A DNA stretch of 63,958 nucleotides, the filler included, from Reticulomyxa filosa (Eukaryota > Protista > Foraminifera): the NCBI GenBank assembly GCA_000512085.1. It is 18 parts of 18 records of this genome, joined end to end, with 100 filler letters (N's around TTAATTAATTAA, not from the genome) between each part and the next. Parts side by side here need not be neighbours in the genome. Positions count along the whole stretch, not along the records: positions 1 to 4,825 come from ASPP01016477.1; 17 more parts are not named here. The stretch is one strand, 5' to 3'. This document shows, in pieces, positions 90-19,300 of the stretch. The notes under the pieces were generated by a model. It was not told the DNA's origin, did not search any database, and saw only the letters and a program-made list of their open reading frames with translations. Within the stretch, counting starts at the first letter, position 1. Every line of letters begins with the position of its first letter. The translations under genes and the position numbers were made by a program.

Positions 90-516
90 AAACTTTAGAT
101 TTTTTTGTTTGTTTATTTGTTTGCATACGTTTTTGGTAACGCGAATTATTCGATTGCTGATTTCGATTCGATTTTGTCCCACCGCTGTTGTTGCGATTTC
201 CGTGTTGCTCTGCTTTAGTACCGCTTTTCTTTTTTTTTTTTTTTTGAAATGACAAAAAACACAAAATGTGGCCATCCTTTTCCTCTTCTTCTTATAAGGT
301 GCGTTATTTATACGTAACTTCTACAGCAGATACGTTGCTATTTTTTGCTGCAAAAGTGTTTTGCTTGGAACTTGCGTTGTTGTTTTGTTCTTCCACATTT
401 TGTAGTTGGTCGTCATTTACATTAAATGTATTGGTATTGGTGTTTTTGGGGCGATAGGAACGCTTGTTCTTATTATGATTCCCTGCACTTGAATAATTGC
501 GATTTGTAGTAGTCAT
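90..516 (-). CDS. N-terminal exons of an Asn/Gln-rich hypothetical protein (partial)
   Basis: ATG at 516 (MTTTNRNYSSAGNHNKNKRSYRPK...). A second N/Q/S-rich segment (SGTKAEQHGNRNNSGG...) follows a short intron-like stretch. No recognisable domain. Confidence 0.4.
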
Positions 517-1274: not shown

Positions 1275-2626
1275 TTATCCCAAATACGAATTGGACCACG
1301 GCTTGAACCATAATACAAATTAATATAATAACCAAGGCCATTGTTGCTTTTTTGTTATTTTTCGATTGTAGGAGTTTAAGACAATATATTCCATAATCTT
1401 CTTTTTCATCTCCATTGATTAAATACAATTCATTCTAATTTGATCGAATATCTCAAAATTGAATTGTATTATTTTTGGTCCAGAACATATCACATTTGAA
1501 CAATTACCAATTTTAGTATTGTTTACTACAAATGATGAATATTCGACAGAATAGATCCAATCTCTATGCCCATTGAATACTTAAATTTGTTTCTAAGATC
1601 GAATATGATGATCCAGATAATACTGTATTTGCATCATTAATATTTCCTAATCAATGTAATCCATATTTTAGGCTTTTCACAAGACCCTTATGTCTTCGAA
1701 TACAATCAATGGTTTGGCTGTTTCAATATCCCATGTACGAATGGTACGATCGAGAGATCTAGAACAAATTGTATATCAATTACTGTCAATCACGCCAACA
1801 CTATTGACTTTCTTGTCATTGTTAATGCTTTGCGTTGATGAAATATCCACACACCAAACAGCGTCTTTATGTCATCAAAAATATACAATTATTTGGATGT
1901 TTCGATATCACATAAACAAACAGTATTGTTACGATATCCAGAATACATATCGGCCACAATTAAATTGTGAAAATTCAATGCTACAAACACCATTGATCGA
2001 ATACTTGCAATTGTCGATTATATTTGAAATCCCAAAAATAAATAGTTTTGTCTTTTGCTGAAGAGTAAATGACATTGAGATTATTGTTATAATAATGATA
2101 TGTCGAAAATTTCACACAATACACAAAACCTGAATGTCCATAGAATGATTGAATTTGATTGTTTGTCCCAATATCTCATACACAAACTGTGCTATCAGCT
2201 AATCCAGAACAAGTTAGTTATTTACCATCAAATGCTGAATAATCAATGCAGTATAATTTCATCTTGTGTCCATTGAATTTTTTGAGTAATTTAGATTATT
2301 AGCAAAATATATCAGGGACGAAGATTGTAGACGCTTGTGTAAGTTATGATCACATATTGATGCTATTTGGACGAAAACAAATTAACAGAAAAACATAATT
2401 GACAACAATTTTATCAAAGTCATGGACCCATACTAATTTAATATCTAACATTCGAAGTCAACATTGAATAATTATTTGAATATCTTCTTCTGACTTCTTC
2501 AGTTGCAAATCACATACAATGAATAACAGATAACAAAACTTAAAGACAGCAAACTTTCTTAAAGACGAATAAAGCTTACCACGCTTGCTGTGTTGTAATT
2601 TGTTTTTCATTGACATGCGTTGTCAT
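1275..2626 (-). pseudogene. WD40-repeat family pseudogene (Reticulomyxa-type expanded family)
   Basis: Starts MTTHVNEKQITTQQA. Has an N-terminal module exon (SEEDIQIIIQC*LRMLDIKLVWVHDFDKIVVNY), WD-like segments (TVCVWDIG, IYFWDFK, AVWCVDIS, TIRTWDIETAK) and a C-terminal GPIRIW, with many stops and frameshifts. Confidence 0.9.
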
Positions 2627-3705: not shown

Positions 3706-4825
3706 ATGTCCTTACAACCTGGAGAAGACCATTCGATATTTGTTGTTGCAAACGAAGAAATCTCTGACCAAGAAGCAGAAAGCGGCAAACGTTACAAGGT
3801 TTTGCTTGACACATGGGGACTGGGAGAATACATTAATACTTTCGAAAAAGGTAGGCAATATATGTCAAAAGGAGAAAGCCGGAAAAAAGCATGGTCAATT
3901 TTGGTCACTATGTTAACTACATGTAACAAAAAACAAAGAAAGCTGGACGGATCCCTTGGATTGGAATGTATTTTTAGACAAGGATGATGAGGACTATCAG
4001 GGAATATTGGAAAGTCTCATTTTTAAAGTTGGTATGTGAGAGCAAGAATATTTCAAAGACATAAAAAAATGCACTCCGAGGATCTGTTCAAATTGTTGTT
4101 TTTTTTGTTTTTGCTTTGTTTGTGTATTTATTTATTTTTGTGTGTAGATATACGTATCCACTAATAAATAGCAATAGTACAAAAGCAATTTAAAAAAAAA
4201 GCACATAGAGTGAAGTTTCGGAGACTAGTAAAAGATTGGCTCAAAGTTCAAGAAAAAAAATCAAAGGATAAACTCTTGTCAGAAGAGAAAGAAGAAGAAG
4301 AAAAGAAAGAAGAGAAAGAGAATGAAACGGGAGAAATGGGAGAAACACAAGAAATTGAAGGAACAGAAGAAGTTATATCGGTCCCCGCTTTGATAGCAGC
4401 AACAGACGTGAAAAAATTGGAGCCGAAAATAACTCATTCATTTGTTGGAGGCCCGTATTTTGCCATAAAAGAGGACAATAAAAATTTTTTAAGTGGTTTG
4501 TTTTATTATTATTATTATTTTTCAGAGATTACGTCTCAGAAATTTTTTCGCTCTAATTTTTGCAATTTGGGCTGTCTAAAAAAAAAGATTGATACGTCCA
4601 AATAGCATACGTAAAATAAAATATACGGAAAAAAAAAAAAAAAAAAAAAAAAAGAAAAATGAAGACGAAATAATGCAATCGGACTTTGAAGACGAGGAAA
4701 GCGAACAGGTTACTTTGGAGCCAAAGGTGGATGAATCAGAATGCTATCATGTGAAATGTGTTTCCTCGGGACGATATTGGGAGTGCAAAGAAATAGAAAA
4801 TGGACGGATCATGATCTACACACAG
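3706..4825 (+). CDS. SAM-domain protein (partial, multi-exon)
   Basis: Removing GT-AG introns 3851-3938 and 4032-4177 gives, in frame, LLDTWGLGEYINTFEKESWTDPLDW...FKKKAHRVKFRRLV, which fits the SAM pattern LGLxxYxxxF...HRxK. An acidic linker and a beta-rich segment follow. Confidence 0.65.
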
Positions 4826-4925: not shown

Positions 4926-6299
4926 ATGTATATTCCTGGACAACTTCCCTTGTGACATCATTTTGTCGTTATTCAAATTGAAAACAGAGAATGGCAAAGA
5001 AATTAACAAACATCAATCAAAGGCGAAGGAAGGCAACTCGATTTGAAGGTTAGTGTGGATATATGTGATTGTGGTATGTCTCCAACAAAGCAGTGCGAAC
5101 ATACGTCCTTTCATTGCGAAGTACTTTACTTTTAGGCTTGGAGTGAGAGAAAGAGAAAATTAAGTGAAGTGAAGAAGAAGAAGAAAAAAAAAATGCAAGA
5201 TCCGGATCAATAGTATCAAAGACATATTGACTGTTTCGAATAATACGAATGACCAAAGACTACGATGCCACGTATGGAAATGAAACACAAGTGAAAATGG
5301 AGTGTTATGTGTTGCAATTACATAACGACATTCAGCTCAAAACATACTCAATTCACCCCCAAGTCATCAATGGATATACGTTTGGCCAAATATCCGTGGT
5401 TACATTTTCATGTATTTATACGTATGTGGTGTGTGTGTGGCTCACAATGTCATACACCAAGAGACGTGTAAAAACACTTCCAAGATGCAAACTAGTGTGA
5501 ATTCGAGTTGGTTTAGTGGATAATATAAAATTGTGATTTATTGCGATTCGATTGATATGCAATTACAAGCAACTGTTTTGTCTTTATTTTTTAATTTATC
5601 ATAAATACTTTTTTAAATAAATATTTTGTTTGTGTGGTATGAAAATCGATGAATAGCAAAAAATTTGCTCAAAACCATTGAAGTTAAAAAACATTTATTA
5701 TTTTTGTCTTTCTTTCTAAGTAATTTCAATTAATTTGCTTTTTGTTTTTTTCTCTCTCCTCTCTCTCAGGTAATATGCTAAGGCCACAAGTGAAGATGTA
5801 GCGAACCAGGCAATGGAACCACAAATGAAAAAAAAGAAGAAGAGCATGTACAAAAATGTTGGATTGAATCCAATACTGCAGCCTCGCTTAATGAACAAAG
5901 GGAATCGAGTTGCGCTTGGTCATGTGGCATTGTATGTATGACGAAACCATTTTTTTTTACACTGGACTCGGTCAAGATAGAAAGCTCTTTTTATATTCAT
6001 TCACATATGATCGCAATCATTAGTTGCAAAAAAGGTAGCAAAAGATTACTTTTATAGATTGATGAAACAAGAAGAAGGAAAAAGAAAAGCAAATCACAGT
6101 AGTATACATATCCAGTAACGTATACTTATAAAAAATTTGAAATGAAAGCAGCGATGACAACACGAAGGGCGTGTATCGACGAAAAGTAACAAAGAAAACA
6201 GAGAATAATAAAATTCAAATCTAGATTGCGACGCAGGATCATTTGTAATTATAAACAAGACTAGGTGGAATCGAAGCGGGCCTAGTTGAAACATAATCG

Positions 6300-6735
6300 A
6301 CGATGATGGTGTCGAGCTACTTGCATTTTAGTTTTGCATTCCCATCCATTCAACCGAAAACGACAAGTTAGTGATCACGAGAATCGTTGCCACAATCAAG
6401 TACAAATTGAAATTGTGTAATATCAAGTAGAAATTGCACGTGCAGCTGCAAGAAGTCTGCTGTTTAAAGCCTTGTACAACTTTGTCCCGTCTATTGGTAT
6501 TTATCTGCTGTTGGAATACGCATCCAAAGACTAGATACAGTACGGCGATAAAACTGACTATTTCTTTCAAGAAAGCGACTATCCAACTGCTAATGACAAA
6601 CACAATGCGCGTCGTTTTGCACTTGCGATCGTATACAGTGCCAAGGACAATATCGACCACGTCTTGTTTGGTCTCTTTTGATGTTTATCCAATTTTTGCT
6701 TTTTTATCGAGCCAGGTGAAGATAACTGCTTAAAC
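6300..6735 (+). pseudogene. Degenerate coding fragment, unknown family
   Basis: Protein-like segments (EIARAAARSLLFKALYNFVPSIG; QYGDKTDYFFQESDYPTANDKHNARRFALAIVYSAKDNIDHVLFG) broken by stops and frameshifts. Confidence 0.3.
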
Positions 6736-12668: not shown

Positions 12669-14340
12669 GAATCACCCAACAATTTTGGAATGGAGCGATC
12701 CTTTGTTTTCGTGACAATAACCGAACATAATTGGAGTTTTGTCTTCTCGACCCTGATCAGTTTCGTCGCGAAAGTTGAAGTGCAGCATATTAAAGACGAT
12801 GGCCCTTCGTGAGAATTTAAGTAAATGCCAGTTGAGTCCAGTACATCACGTCGGAATGCAACAACGCAAACGCCTTCATTCCCTTCGTGTTGTCCTTCAA
12901 GAAACTGGACAGAATTTTTTCCATGTGCAACACAAAATGATGCTGTCGCGGATTGCATTTTGAAGTGGAAAATGTCGAGGGTTCATCTTCACTAATCTGG
13001 CGAAGACAACGATCAAGGAATTTGGTTGGATATTGAACACGACCTTTTTTATCGTATAAATTTTATTATTATTACATTAGCATATATACACACATATGTT
13101 TATATCATCAAATTAGAAAATCGACACAAATAACATCAATTGTACAATACAAAACTAGCACTTGCTTTTTCTTTTCAGCTTGCTTAGGATTGGCCTGATG
13201 TTGAATGGAGTCTTTTGCCTTCGCGCCATTGTTTCGTTCCAGCAATTTTGCATACATCTCCGAATATTGACCGACCTGCGTCCCCACAGTACTGCGTGTC
13301 TTTGCGTCCTCCGTACACACACATAATACAAACATGATCTTGGCACAAGGAAGTATTGCATCTTTTGTCGGATGGCACTTTTGGGCGCATTTGTGGCCGC
13401 AAGGCAGTAGGCCACATTTGCTACTGGCCTTCACTGGCCATTGTGTGTGCTTCCAAGTCGTCGACACAGTTGCCCGAGTGGCATTAGCGTTGGCACGTGT
13501 GGACATTGCAAGGCAGCAATTGTTCGCACATATTTCCACAAAATAATGCTTTCGTCCAACAAGGGATACTGTGTACTAATATGTTATGAGTTTTACAATG
13601 GATCGATACATGTTCTGTAAATCTGTTGCAAGGACCTTATTTGCATCCTCACCCCCATTATATATTCAATGCTTTTTTTTTTAATCAAATTAGAAAATTT
13701 TTTTTAAAAAAAATTGAAACATACCAAAGTAACAATATTCACTGTATCGATTGCCACAGTCCAACACTGATGCAGCGTCACGGTTCCACAAAGGATTGAG
13801 CTTGAATGCGCTGATGCAACAAGCACAGGACAGACCATCTCGAAGGGTAAATCCACACGACTGGCAAGGCCCACTGTAACAAAGACTAGAACAGCTATGA
13901 CATCACATCGCAATGGCTTGTTGCAGATCTCACGACACTGTTGTCCTGGGAAAAACCAGTCCTTGTCACTGTTTACAAGTCATCACAAGTCTTTGCATTT
14001 GTGCATTCCACAGGTCAAAATGCGATGATATTTTTTATTACAACTGATACGTCATTGACAATTGTCATCGAGTGTTTCTTGCTTCTTCTTCATATCTGCT
14101 GACATTAGATGACCTTCATTTCGCTGCCGCAACGACATTGCTTCTTGACCAAAATTGCGCAAAGCGCGCAAGGTGGAGACATGGCATCGCTAAATACAAA
14201 AATTCTATCTGCACGCCAACATACGGTCGTAAGCGCTGCCACAAGTGGCAAAGGGTCTATTCTCCAAAGGTGTATCTGTCAATGCAAGGATTAGTAATAG
14301 TAACAACGCATTGTGTTGTCAAAGTTGATGCCATCTGAAA
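12669..14340 (-). pseudogene. NFX1: NF-X1-type zinc-finger + R3H protein pseudogene (C-terminal half)
   Basis: NF-X1-like repeats (LTCGMHKC, CHSCSSLCYSGPCQSC, LPCGHKCAQKCHP, KKQCRCG) and a C-terminal R3H-like segment (HFVLHMEKILSSFL...SVIVTKTKDRSIPKLL), with many indels. Confidence 0.75.
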
Positions 14341-14449
14341 CATTCGCCCCATGTTGCATCACCGTTTTCTTTTTCCGTATTTCACCTTTCAACACAATTG
14401 TTGAATCTGGACTCACTAGGCAACATTCAAATTTTCAAAATGCTAGTAA

Positions 14450-17400
14450 TTGGAATACACAACAGCATATATGTTGTGTCTTGAGGAATTGACAGCAGGT
14501 GTGTGTTTGACTGATGTTCGCAATCCATCAGAGACTAATGGTAACGTCAGCCAATTGAGCAGGTAAATCGTCATAGTTGCATGATTGGTTAAAATCTCTG
14601 ATTGTGTTCACTCGCCAGATAATCGTAGTATTATCATAAGTGGCTAATACCACGACTATACATATTCAATTCACCATTCAGTGTGGTCAACTGAGCCATA
14701 AGTATCTTCACACATGATATCCAAATACAAAGATTCACTGTTGTCACATTCGGAATCATCGCTTGACGATTAATCTAATGATGATGTATTTCCTCGCAAA
14801 CATCGATGATCAATATTGTATCGTTCACTATCTTGAATGCCTTGCAATTCGTATAATCCTTGTCTCAAAGTATTGACACTTGCCAGTAGTAACTTCGACT
14901 TCCCAGACCCATCCCCTCGGTCTAATTCAGTTGTAAATCCATCATATCTTTGGTCATCAAGTCAATGCACAAGTCAGTCGCAAGGAATTTGTAAAAATAA
15001 TTTCTCCAATGGCACTGGAACTTGTGTTGGATTGTTGTTCAAATACCGACTTCTCGCATACACACAACTTAGTATTGGATATACGTACTATCTTTGGAAG
15101 CTTTAAACAGTCGATAACTCCAATGTCCATCAGCTTCGTCCTTATTCCAGTGCATGCGGGCCGAAACGTATGAGGATAGTAGCAAATTGTAGCGTTGGAC
15201 TTTCCGTTGTGCGAAGGCAGTGCTACTTATTGGATGACAGGTTGGTTTGCTTGTGGATTTTGTGTTGGTCTCGAAGTAGGAGTTGTTGAGTTGAATGTTG
15301 GACTATTGTTTGGGTGTATGTTGTGGAATCTGTAGGATTGTTTGTTGGACTGTATGTCAGACTATTAGTTAGACTATAAGTCGGGCTGTACGAGGACTGA
15401 ATGGTGCTATATGTTGGACTGTTGGTATGAGCATTGGCTGGCTTTGAGTTGGATTGTAAGTCGTAGTATTTGTTGGACTTCCCGTTGAGCTGTATGTTGG
15501 TGAATCGTTGGTCGAATGTTGGTGCATTTGTTGTACTGCCGTTGGTGCGCTTGTCTGACTAAAATTGGACTTTCCGTTGTATTATTGTTTGGGCTGAAAG
15601 TCGGACTATAAATAGGACTGTGCGTATGATTATTGGTTGACTATAATTCGGGTTCGATATCAGTGAATATGTCGGCGAATACGTCGGACTGTGTAGGAGC
15701 GTTCGTTGGACTTGGCGTTGGACTGTAAACATGAATTGGTTGGCTTGGTATTGACTTTACGTATGTCCACTGCAATAGGTGCGTTCGTTGGACTGAAAGT
15801 GGATGCATTCGTCAGGCTATATTTTGGATTGGCTGTTGGACTAATGTTGGCGCATTTGTTGGGCTAAGTAGGAGCGTTTGTCGAGCTGGAGTTGGTGCAT
15901 TTGTTGGATTTGGTGTTGGGCTCTCCGTTGTGTTGTAGGTGGTGCACCTATTGGAGTGTAAGTTGGAGCATTTGTTGACTATAAGTGGACTGCATGTTGG
16001 CGCATTGGTTGGATTTGGAGTCGACTGTTTGTTGGACATAAGCCCTCTCCGTTGGCCATACGTTGGAGCGTTTGTTGCGCTCTTCTTTGAGCTGTATGTC
16101 GGCTGTCGCTTGAAGAGTAAGTTGGAGACCAGTTGGTGATTATGTGAGGAATGTGTTGGAAAATATTTGGACATTCGTTGGTGATGGAGCTAAGTCAGTT
16201 GAATATGTTGGCGAGGAAGTTGTTGAGTGTTGGAGCATTTGTTGGACTGTGCGTTGGGGCGCCAGTTGGTGAAAAAGGAAAGTTAGACTGCCTGGTGAAT
16301 GTAAGTTGGACTATAAGTCGCATTGTCCATGGGAATATTGGCCGTTGGTTGGATAGTACGTTGGACTGTATGTTGAGCGCCAGGGTGAATACGTTGTGGT
16401 GTAAGTCGGATTGTTTGTTGCAGCACCAGTTGGGGAATATATTGGATTGAATGTTAAAGCGCCTTTGAGAATAATTTGAGCTGTCCGTTAGCGAGTATGT
16501 CTTGCTCCGTTGGCAAAGCAGTCAGGAGTACGTTGGATGTTATCGTCCGTTAGAGGAAATGTTGGAGCATCAGTCGGTGACTGGTCGGGCATTTGTTAGA
16601 TAATACGTTGAAGCGTCTGTTGGGGAATTAGTTAGAACGTTGGTGAGTTGTTGATATCTCGTTGGCAAATACGTCGGTCAAGTTGGAGAAAATGCTAGTA
16701 CGTCCGTTGGTGGGAAGTACGTGAATACGTTGGTGACTGTGTTGACGCGTTAGTTGGTGACTACGTTGTTCTGTATGTTGGAGCGCTCGTTGAGGATACG
16801 TTGGTGAAATGTTGGAGAAAATGTTGGTTATGTCTAACGCAATTGACAACAAATTATTCGGATTGTCCGTTGGCGATAAGTGTGGCTGAATGTTGATGCC
16901 AGTTGGCGAATATGTCGAGCCATTGGTGAATAAGTTGGGGAAAATGTTGGCGCACCATTTGCGAAAAAGCTGGCGACTGCGTATTGCACCGGTCGTTGAC
17001 TCCGTTGGCGAATATTGGACTAAATGTCGGCCCCGTTGGAAAATAAGTTGTGCAGAATCAGCGATCCGTTGAAGTATTTGTTGGACCAAAGTCGGACTGT
17101 ATGTTGGCGCATTGTTTGGATTTGGAGTCCGACTGTTTGTTGAGCTAAAATCTGGCTCTCCGTTGGGCTATATGTCGGCTATTGTCGGACTGTCGGTTGG
17201 AGAGAAGTTGGATCACCAGTTGGCGAGTATGTTGGGAAATGTTGGAGAATAGGTCAGTCTTTCGTTGGTGATGGAGTCAGAGTCAGTTGAACACCAGCAT
17301 GATATATGTCGGTGAGTACGTTGGAGCACCGTTTGCGAGTAAGTTGAGGAATGTTGACGAGTTGGTTGGAGAGACTTTGGACTGTACGTTGGAGCGCCAG

Positions 17401-19300
17401 TTGGTGAATACGTTGGTGTAAGTCAGTCTGTTGGATTGTGTCTGAGTGCTTGTTGGATGTTGGGGACATGTTGGGCTGAATGTTGTAGCGCCTGTTAGAG
17501 ATAAATTGTGGAATACTGGTGACTATTGGCGAAGCAGCTGTGAGACGTTGGACTTGATGTTAGAGCATCCGTTGGAGAAAATGGTAGCACCCGTTGGTGA
17601 ATAAGTTGGTGAATGGTTGGAGCATGTCGGTGACTTGTCGGAGCATTTGTTGAGAATACGTTGAAGCGCTTGTTGGAGCGTCAGTTGGAGCGTCAGTTGG
17701 AGAAAGGTTGGATGTCGGAGAGCCTTTGGGGAATATGTATGATACGTTAATTAGTATGTTGGTATCCGTTGGAACACCTGTTGGCAAATATGTTGATAAT
17801 AAGTTGGCGACTGCGTTGGTGCGCCCGTTGGAGACTCCGTTGGCGTATTTGTTGGCTCATCTGTTGAATTCGTTGGCGAATAAATTGGACTGATGTTGGT
17901 GCGCAGTTGGTGAATACGTTGGAGAAAATGTCGTCTTTGTTAGTGCATTCGTTGGCAAAAAAGTTGGCGAATGCGTAGATGCATTGATCAGTGATTCCGT
18001 ATGCATTTGTTGGTGAATTTGGAATACGTTGGCAACTTGTTGGCGCATTCCTTGATGAATAAGTTGGTGAGCCATGGTACTAAATGTTGGTGCACCTGCT
18101 GGAGAATAGATTGGACAGAATGTAAGCGCATCCGTTGTGACATTTTTGTAGAGTAAGTTCGACGAACGTTGGCGCATCAGTCGGTGAATGTTGGAGCTCC
18201 TGTTGAGACGAAGTTGGGCTCAAGTTGGATGTCTTGTTGGTGCTTTGATGGATGTCTGGCTGTGTCTTGTTTGGCTTTTTGTGTGATACTTGGTTGAGGT
18301 TTTGTTGGGGGTTTCGTTGGTTGCTTGGTGATAGTCTGTTGTAAGTCAAAATGTATATTGTATTATTTTATTCAAAAATGCTATTAGTCACACAAAAAAC
18401 AAAACTTGGTTTGGCACATAAGACACTGCAAAGATCGCCAATCCTTCAAGGTGATGACTTGGTTGGCAGTGACAACACGTTGAGTTGAAGGTTTCAACAA
18501 GCAGGAAAACAAATCTTTGTACGTGATCTCTTTAACAGGAACCCACCAAAAGTTAATCAATTTTTTTTGAAATTTCATTCCATGTTGACAAGTTCATTGG
18601 CATCCAATATGAAAATATCACGATTCCTGCCTAAAACATTAACGATCTAGAAATCCTTGTGCCGCCATAGCGCATTCATTCGATGCCCCTTTTAATTCTC
18701 GCAAATAATTGTACCCACATTTTCTCCAGTTGGAAACTGTCGTCCGAAATTGACTTGTACGTTCCACGATCCAAAGTCCATGCTGCCCGTTTGACAAGGA
18801 GTCCCATAAAAGTTGAGAAGTGGTAATAATTTGATGGTTGGCGCCACAGTCGAAATAAATGGAGTTTGAAGGCATGTTGGTGGTTTGTTGCACCAGTGGT
18901 TGTGTGACGGCTGGCAATACATTTGAATAAACGATACTGGTGAATTAGCAAAGTTTGTTGGTTCAATATACCAAATTTTGCCTGGTCTTCGCTGGTTGAT
19001 GCGATCCATGTGAAGCACGTCGTTTTTGAGAACTCGACTGAAAGCATTTGGAAGTGTGGAATAAAAGAATGACGACTCCAATCTGTTTCCGTTTGGATTT
19101 GTCCATTTTCTGAACCAACAGCCATAAACATAAGGAACTTTTGCATGCCCAAGTCGATCAACTGTCCGGTAATGTAGCTGTATACGTCGCTTGCGATACC
19201 ACAACCAATTCCATGCTGCAGTTAAATGTGTGCGTCAGTTGCAAGCCCACTTTGTCTGATTTGGGAAGTCGATACTCTTCCCGCCGTTGTCCACTCAATG
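14450..19300 (-). pseudogene. Mucin/extensin-like extracellular protein pseudogene (globular N-terminus, PT stalk, C-terminal domain)
   Basis: N-terminal fragments LIDLGMQK...VEFSKTTCFTW (F5/8 type C-like) and YFDCGANHQII...SNECAMAAQGF, then the PT array, then degenerate globular sequence. Domain identities are tentative. Confidence 0.55.
15190..18340 (-). repeat. Degenerate Pro/Thr/Ser-rich repeat array (PTxxPT; SPTNAPT/SPTDAPT)
   Basis: About 3 kb dominated by gttgg on + (CCAAC on -). Translated fragments include PTPNPTNAPT, SPTDAPTDAPT and FSPTYSPT, with constant frame switching. Confidence 0.9.

What the first reader, a model, noticed from the sequence alone, without database searches (positions are those of the whole stretch)
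2395..2493. One ~33-aa exon-encoded module is shared by the WD40 family (N-terminal) and the Kelch family (C-terminal): candidate lineage-specific adaptor box
Seen: the WD40 pseudogene encodes SEEDIQIIIQC*LRMLDIKLVWVHDFDKIVVNY (2493-2395, ending at a GT donor). The Kelch gene's last exon (45077-44970, starting at an AG acceptor) encodes SKNEIKCITQRWIRISNIKFGWINDFDKVITRY. The two align without gaps (I..I.Q.W.R...IK..W..DFDK....Y), yet sit at opposite ends of two unrelated beta-propeller families. Established: F-box, SOCS/BC-box and BTB motifs are short portable helical modules that link variable WD40/Kelch propellers to cullin E3 ligases. Inference: this is a portable, exon-shuffled docking module defining a large, fast-turnover repertoire of substrate receptors, possibly a ubiquitin-based defence or quality-control system. 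This window alone holds about five family members, two of them dead.
Basis: partly seen in the sequence, partly recalled or inferred. Interest (0 to 1): 0.8.

Follow-up and report, generated by a model that had tools for sequence, protein, structure and literature searches.

The report
Foraminiferan two-helix box linking propeller families
A short two-helix motif with no Pfam match is attached to at least 70 Kelch and WD40 proteins of the foraminiferan Reticulomyxa filosa (the copy here is dead), and it probably docks them onto shared machinery such as a ubiquitin ligase, though its partner is unproven.

Summary
The window is Reticulomyxa filosa contig ASPP01016477.1. It holds a dead WD40 gene whose second exon (2493-2395, minus strand, phase 0-0) encodes a 31-33 aa box. 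The sharing claim was confirmed on other contigs. An HMM built only from WD40-linked copies finds the box in 56 of 120 R. filosa Kelch models, mostly at the C-terminus (shuffled maximum 9 bits). New here: four contigs carry Kelch-box-WD40 genes with the same intron phases, so the box is the junction between the families; fusion or fission there explains the sharing as well as free exon shuffling does. The box is under purifying selection (dN/dS 0.26-0.41), lies outside both propellers, folds as two helices in the AlphaFold2 model, and recurs in a 33%-identical metagenomic Kelch protein. It matches no Pfam, NCBIfam or PDB sequence, and 0 of 70 copies fit strict BC-box, Cul2, Cul5 or F-box patterns. 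Best reading (0.5): a divergent cullin-RING adaptor box; it sits where KLHDC2/10 carry their BC/Cul2 box. Rivals are a lineage-specific docking motif (0.25) and LisH-like dimerisation (0.2). No partner has been shown.

The parts
2580..2626 (-). Exon 1 of the WD40 pseudogene (short leader, ATG at 2626); 47 nt, so out of phase with exon 2
   Evidence: aligns with exon 1 of the paralogue in L002
2494..2579 (-). Intron 1 (GT 2579-2578, AG 2495-2494); the phase-0 intron found before the box in WD40, Kelch and Kelch-box-WD40 genes
2395..2493 (-). Box exon, 33 codons, phase 0-0. Dead copy: invariant Trp is a stop (2460-2458) and the 99%-conserved Gly is Val
   Evidence: 36 bits to the family HMM; column frequencies
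2335..2394 (-). Intron 2 (GT 2394-2393); the acceptor reads AA at 2336-2335 where paralogues have AG
1280..2334 (-). Exon 3: degraded WD40 propeller (subfamily A) with many stops and 11 frameshifting indels; NCBI model RFI_19810 (160 aa) stitches pieces of it and omits the box

Best explanation
The box is a divergent adaptor motif of the BC-box/cullin-box (SOCS/VHL-like) or F-box kind. It docks a large, fast-turning-over set of Kelch and WD40 propellers onto one shared cullin-RING ligase core. Helix 1 would pack on an Elongin C/Skp1-type adaptor, helix 2 would act like a cullin box or F-box helix 1, and the propeller would choose the substrate. Shown: the module, its exon structure, purifying selection, and (in a predicted model) two helices outside the propeller. 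Inferred: the partner and any role in ubiquitylation. The window copy is a pseudogene and does nothing.
For: The AF2 model of Kelch-box protein P0160 has a closed propeller (63-367) followed by helices 375-394 and 399-412. Its top Foldseek hit is KLHDC10-EloB/C (9d8p_A, E 1e-14). VIA aligns model 59-392 to KLHDC10 41-433 (Z 26.6, rmsd 4.7) and 68-413 to KLHDC2 27-395 (Z 24.9, rmsd 7.0); KLHDC10's BC and Cul2 boxes are 402-414 and 415-442 (PMC10591846). KLHDC10 is the second-best PDB sequence hit of the family profile (E 2e-5), and KLHDC3/10 occur in SAR lineages (PMC10591846). Helix 2 keeps the register of F-box helix 1 (acidic at +3, hydrophobic at +4 and +8, Tyr at +11) in 83% of copies and the Cul2-box spacing in 100%, with Ile in place of Pro. 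The same WD40-A propeller also occurs behind a TRAF zinc finger with a weak RING-like hit and no box. dN/dS is 0.26-0.41.
Against: Strict BC-box and Cul2-box patterns (PMC4878042), Cul5 LPxP and F-box LPxE all match 0 of 70 copies, and no copy has any Pro. No Pfam F-box, SOCS, VHL or BTB hit among 61 members. The relaxed patterns were fitted after the fact, and a relaxed LisH pattern fits too. The structural extension has high rmsd and covers a region of pLDDT 58-71; only chains with helices after a Kelch domain could align there. Cul2/Cul5-Elongin complexes were judged animal-specific (PMC2785787). R. filosa Elongin C, Skp1 and cullins were not examined.
Confidence: 0.5

Rival explanations
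1. A lineage-specific docking motif unrelated to known boxes that recruits another shared partner, such as a signalling or defence effector. The propellers act as interchangeable sensors carrying the box, a TRAF finger or a caspase-like domain.
For: No match in Pfam, NCBIfam or PDB sequences, and no usable Atlas feature hit. The near-invariant Trp, Arg, Gly-Trp-Ile and Phe are not part of any CRL-box consensus. A box-less Kelch gene appears to run into a caspase domain (PF00656 E 1.3e-16) next to a NACHT-HEAT gene.
Against: Position and helix spacing match the KLHDC box. Short boxes diverge beyond HMM detection, so blanks are weak. The Kelch-caspase join is one unconfirmed locus.
Confidence: 0.25
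2. A divergent LisH-like dimerisation motif: two boxes form a four-helix bundle and pair propellers, including Kelch with WD40.
For: LisH is about 34 aa and mediates dimerisation (PMC12648486); it occurs in LIS1 and in the Kelch protein muskelin (PMC2518711). Helix 1 spacing plus Gly-aromatic fits a relaxed LisH pattern in 67% of copies (pattern from memory).
Against: The strict recalled LisH pattern matches 0 of 70. It needs a 4-residue insertion and a large Phe at a small-residue position. No Pfam LisH hit. An extreme C-terminal position is unusual for LisH (own knowledge).
Confidence: 0.2
3. A structural cap or closing element of the propeller, or a neutral piece carried along by recent duplication.
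For: The family is young in parts and rich in pseudogenes; AF2 confidence in the box is modest.
Against: The Kelch propeller closes without it. WD40 PDB matches start after it, at profile position 39 or later. It sits on opposite ends of unrelated propellers, some family members lack it, dN/dS is about 0.3, and box identity to L008 (47%) exceeds whole-protein identity (33%).
Confidence: 0.05

Closest known systems
KLHDC2/3/10 (CRL2 substrate receptors: Kelch propeller plus C-terminal BC-box and Cul2-box)
   Same: Six-bladed Kelch propeller running straight into a roughly 40-aa helical tail; best structural hit, with alignments that extend into the tail.
   Different: Two main helices rather than three; no S/T/P-Leu or C/S/A of the BC-box and no Cul2-box Pro; the box is also used before WD40 and between two propellers; at least 56 Kelch copies rather than a handful.
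F-box/WD40 and F-box/Kelch proteins (SCF)
   Same: A short helical box N-terminal to WD40; large birth-and-death family; helix 2 keeps F-box helix-1 spacing.
   Different: No LPxE; nothing resembling F-box helices 2-3 follows; C-terminal in Kelch genes; no Pfam F-box hit.
SOCS-box proteins such as WSB1/2 (Cul5)
   Same: A portable helical box shared by unrelated repeat domains.
   Different: No LPxP Cul5 motif (0 of 70); N-terminal on WD40 rather than C-terminal.
LisH motif (LIS1, muskelin)
   Same: Same length, two helices, Gly-aromatic turn, found with both WD40 and Kelch.
   Different: Longer linker, different helix 2, no Pfam hit, no CTLH domain seen.

Membership tests
VHL-box / Cul2 receptors | BC-box (S,T,P)LxxxC/S/Axxx-hydrophobic (PMC4878042) | tested here: not met
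   0 of 70; the relaxed form fits 67% and is not clearly above column shuffles, p about 0.06
VHL-box / Cul2 receptors | Cul2-box: hydrophobic-P-x-x-hydrophobic-x-x-x-hydrophobic (PMC4878042) | tested here: not met
   0 of 70 with Pro; the spacing is kept with Ile in its place
VHL-box / Cul2 receptors | Helical box placed directly after the last Kelch blade, as in KLHDC2/10 | tested here: met
   Predicted model only; rmsd 4.7-7.0
VHL-box / Cul2 receptors | Binds Elongin B/C and a cullin | not testable with these tools
   No multimer prediction or assay available
SOCS box (Cul5) | LPxP cullin-5 box and Pfam SOCS_box match | tested here: not met
   0 of 70; no Pfam hit
F-box | LPxE-I helix 1 (pattern from own knowledge) and Pfam F-box match | tested here: not met
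   Strict 0 of 70; relaxed helix-1 register 83%; no Pfam hit
F-box | Binds Skp1 | not testable with these tools
   No multimer prediction or assay available
LisH | Pfam LisH match or LisH consensus (recalled) | tested here: not met
   No Pfam hit; strict pattern 0 of 70, relaxed 67%
LisH | Two-helix hairpin that homodimerises | tested here: inconclusive
   Two helices in the full model but one long helix when folded alone; dimer not testable
WD40 repeat (pseudogene body) | PF00400 repeats | tested here: met
   E 4.5e-8, above the gathering score

The most novel reading that the evidence does not exclude
The box is a new class of adaptor motif with its own foraminiferan partner, at the centre of a combinatorial receptor system in which Kelch and WD40 propellers are swapped between box, TRAF-finger and caspase-like outputs: an innate-immune-like repertoire in a giant single-celled protist.
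Probability: 0.22. Interest if true: 0.78.

Novelty: new variant of a known kind. Interest (0 to 1): 0.52.

Why it matters
It names an uncatalogued motif that ties together two of the large gene families of a foraminiferan genome and gives a small, testable handle on what they do. If it recruits a cullin ligase, a rhizarian has independently built a large substrate-receptor repertoire with a non-canonical box, which bears on how CRL adaptor boxes evolve outside animals and plants. If it binds something else, it is a new docking class.

Tried and rejected
The genome search 'own' held no genome, so no genome-wide census was possible and all counts are lower bounds. No sequencing runs were listed, so expression and splicing were not checked by reads. 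The box folded alone gave one long helix and only generic helix matches, Z at most 5. Metagenome loci L005-L007 are 57-60% GC genes with no propeller, picked by the search pattern, and are treated as chance. The box tree (31 columns) is mostly unresolved and cannot give direction. No paper mentioning both R. filosa and Kelch is held and the genome paper is not held, so prior description cannot be excluded.

Full report
Source and observation. The window's annotated fragment (P0049, RFI_19810) maps to a 4825-bp contig of Reticulomyxa filosa, ASPP01016477.1, so the piece is a whole contig. They form exon 2 of a three-exon WD40 gene: leader 2626-2580, box 2493-2395, propeller 2334 to about 1280. 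The gene is dead. Exon 1 is 47 nt, the box's invariant Trp is a stop, the exon-3 acceptor reads AA, and exon 3 has many stops and 11 frameshifting indels against an intact paralogue exon (some indels may be alignment or homopolymer artefacts, the substitution stops are not).

Is the module shared? Fifteen of the 150 relatives of a WD40 piece carry the box in front of a WD40 propeller. An HMM built from WD40-linked copies alone hits 56 of 120 R. filosa Kelch-family models, most at 40-57 bits and most within a few residues of the C-terminus; the best of 1200 shuffled proteins scored 9.0. Of the 64 models without it, 17 end by reading into the intron just before the box position, and in the one checked (L011) the box exon follows in the DNA. 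The consensus is NEIKxIIQYWIRxLxIKLGWIxDFDKIIxKY, with Trp10 at 100%, Gly19 and Trp20 at 99%, Ile21 and Phe24 at 97%, Arg12 and Tyr31 at 91%. Mean identity between WD40 and Kelch copies is 56%.

How it is shared. There are four box architectures: box-WD40-A (this window), box-WD40-B (L004), Kelch-box, and Kelch-box-WD40-B on four contigs (L002, L009, L012, L013), where GT-AG phase-0 introns flank the box exon. WD40-A and WD40-B are only about 25-43% identical. The upstream intron is phase 0 in every intron-bearing copy examined, and the donor after Tyr31 is shared by box-WD40 and two of the three-part genes. Members of all types lie side by side on L002 and L010. A symmetric exon allows shuffling, but a three-part gene that splits, or recombination between the 3' box of a Kelch gene and the 5' box of a WD40 gene, gives the same pattern (inference). 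The tree separates WD40 copies (87/75) and one three-part group (98/95) but cannot give direction. The three-part genes seen are partly broken or cut by contig ends, and no transcript was available.

It is functional and separate from the propellers. Among intact copies dN/dS is 0.26-0.41 (small sample), and exons are more alike than the adjacent introns (72% against 48% between families). A JGI metagenome contig (L008, 38% GC, organism unknown) holds an intact, intronless Kelch-box frame 33% identical to the R. filosa family overall but 47% in the box, so Kelch-box is older than the R. filosa expansion. In the AF2 model the Kelch propeller closes at residue 367 and the box forms helices 375-394 and 399-412 at pLDDT 58-71. 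WD40 matches in the PDB begin only after the box. This removes the 'closing element' reading.

What it does. No library names it: Pfam, NCBIfam, PDB sequences and Atlas features are blank. The best lead is architectural. The Kelch-box model's top Foldseek hit is KLHDC10-EloB/C, and VIA alignments run into the BC/Cul2 box of KLHDC10 and KLHDC2, though at rmsd 4.7-7.0 (domain limits from PMC10591846). Against membership, the published BC-box and Cul2-box patterns (PMC4878042), LPxP and LPxE match none of 70 copies. Relaxed BC+Cul2, F-box helix-1 and LisH patterns all fit (66%, 83%, 67%), but I fitted them after seeing the box, so they do not discriminate. Context favours a sensor-plus-output design: the WD40-A propeller also occurs behind a TRAF zinc finger with no box, and one box-less Kelch gene appears to continue into a caspase domain. 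I put a cullin-RING adaptor role at 0.5, a lineage-specific docking role at 0.25, LisH-like dimerisation at 0.2 and a structural or neutral role at 0.05. It works like a CRL box by position and shape; it is not a member of any named box family by the tests run.

Limits and verdict. New variant of a known kind, interest 0.52.

Noticed in passing
L014:9301-12321 (ASPP01012889.1): A box-less Kelch gene (P0256) appears to continue through a phase-0 intron into a coil and a caspase domain (PF00656 E 1.3e-16, His-Gly and Cys present); a NACHT-HEAT gene lies next to it at 13021-18408 (-).
   Followed up: partly
P0003, P0004, P0007, P0014, P0057, P0092: The same WD40-A propeller occurs behind a TRAF zinc finger and a long linker (TRAF7-like layout; RING hits weak, E 0.01-0.9) without the box. 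Only P0003 was confirmed by name as R. filosa.
   Followed up: partly
L008:52-1206 (Ga0181507_1197393): Intact intronless Kelch-box frame, 33% identical to the R. filosa family, from an unknown organism; its box has Pro after Trp-Ile. Possibly a transcript or another foraminiferan.
   Followed up: partly
L015:5360-6472: Kelch-box gene P0187 lacks the intron before the box, and the first box residues differ, suggesting an imprecise intron loss.
   Followed up: no
L010 (minus strand, near the WD40 model at 5520-6385) and L014:7368-7460: Further decayed box copies with frameshifts or stops; dead members are common.
   Followed up: no
window 3706-4759 (+): NCBI model of 273 aa with no Pfam hit; the first exon ends in a stretch that resembles the start of a SAM domain (resemblance from memory, not confirmed), followed by a Glu/Lys-rich region.
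   Followed up: partly
window 94-516 (-): NCBI model of 125 aa, Asn/Gln/Thr-rich low-complexity, no convincing Pfam hit.
   Followed up: partly
P0154: A 519-aa model with two Kelch-family units in tandem.
   Followed up: no
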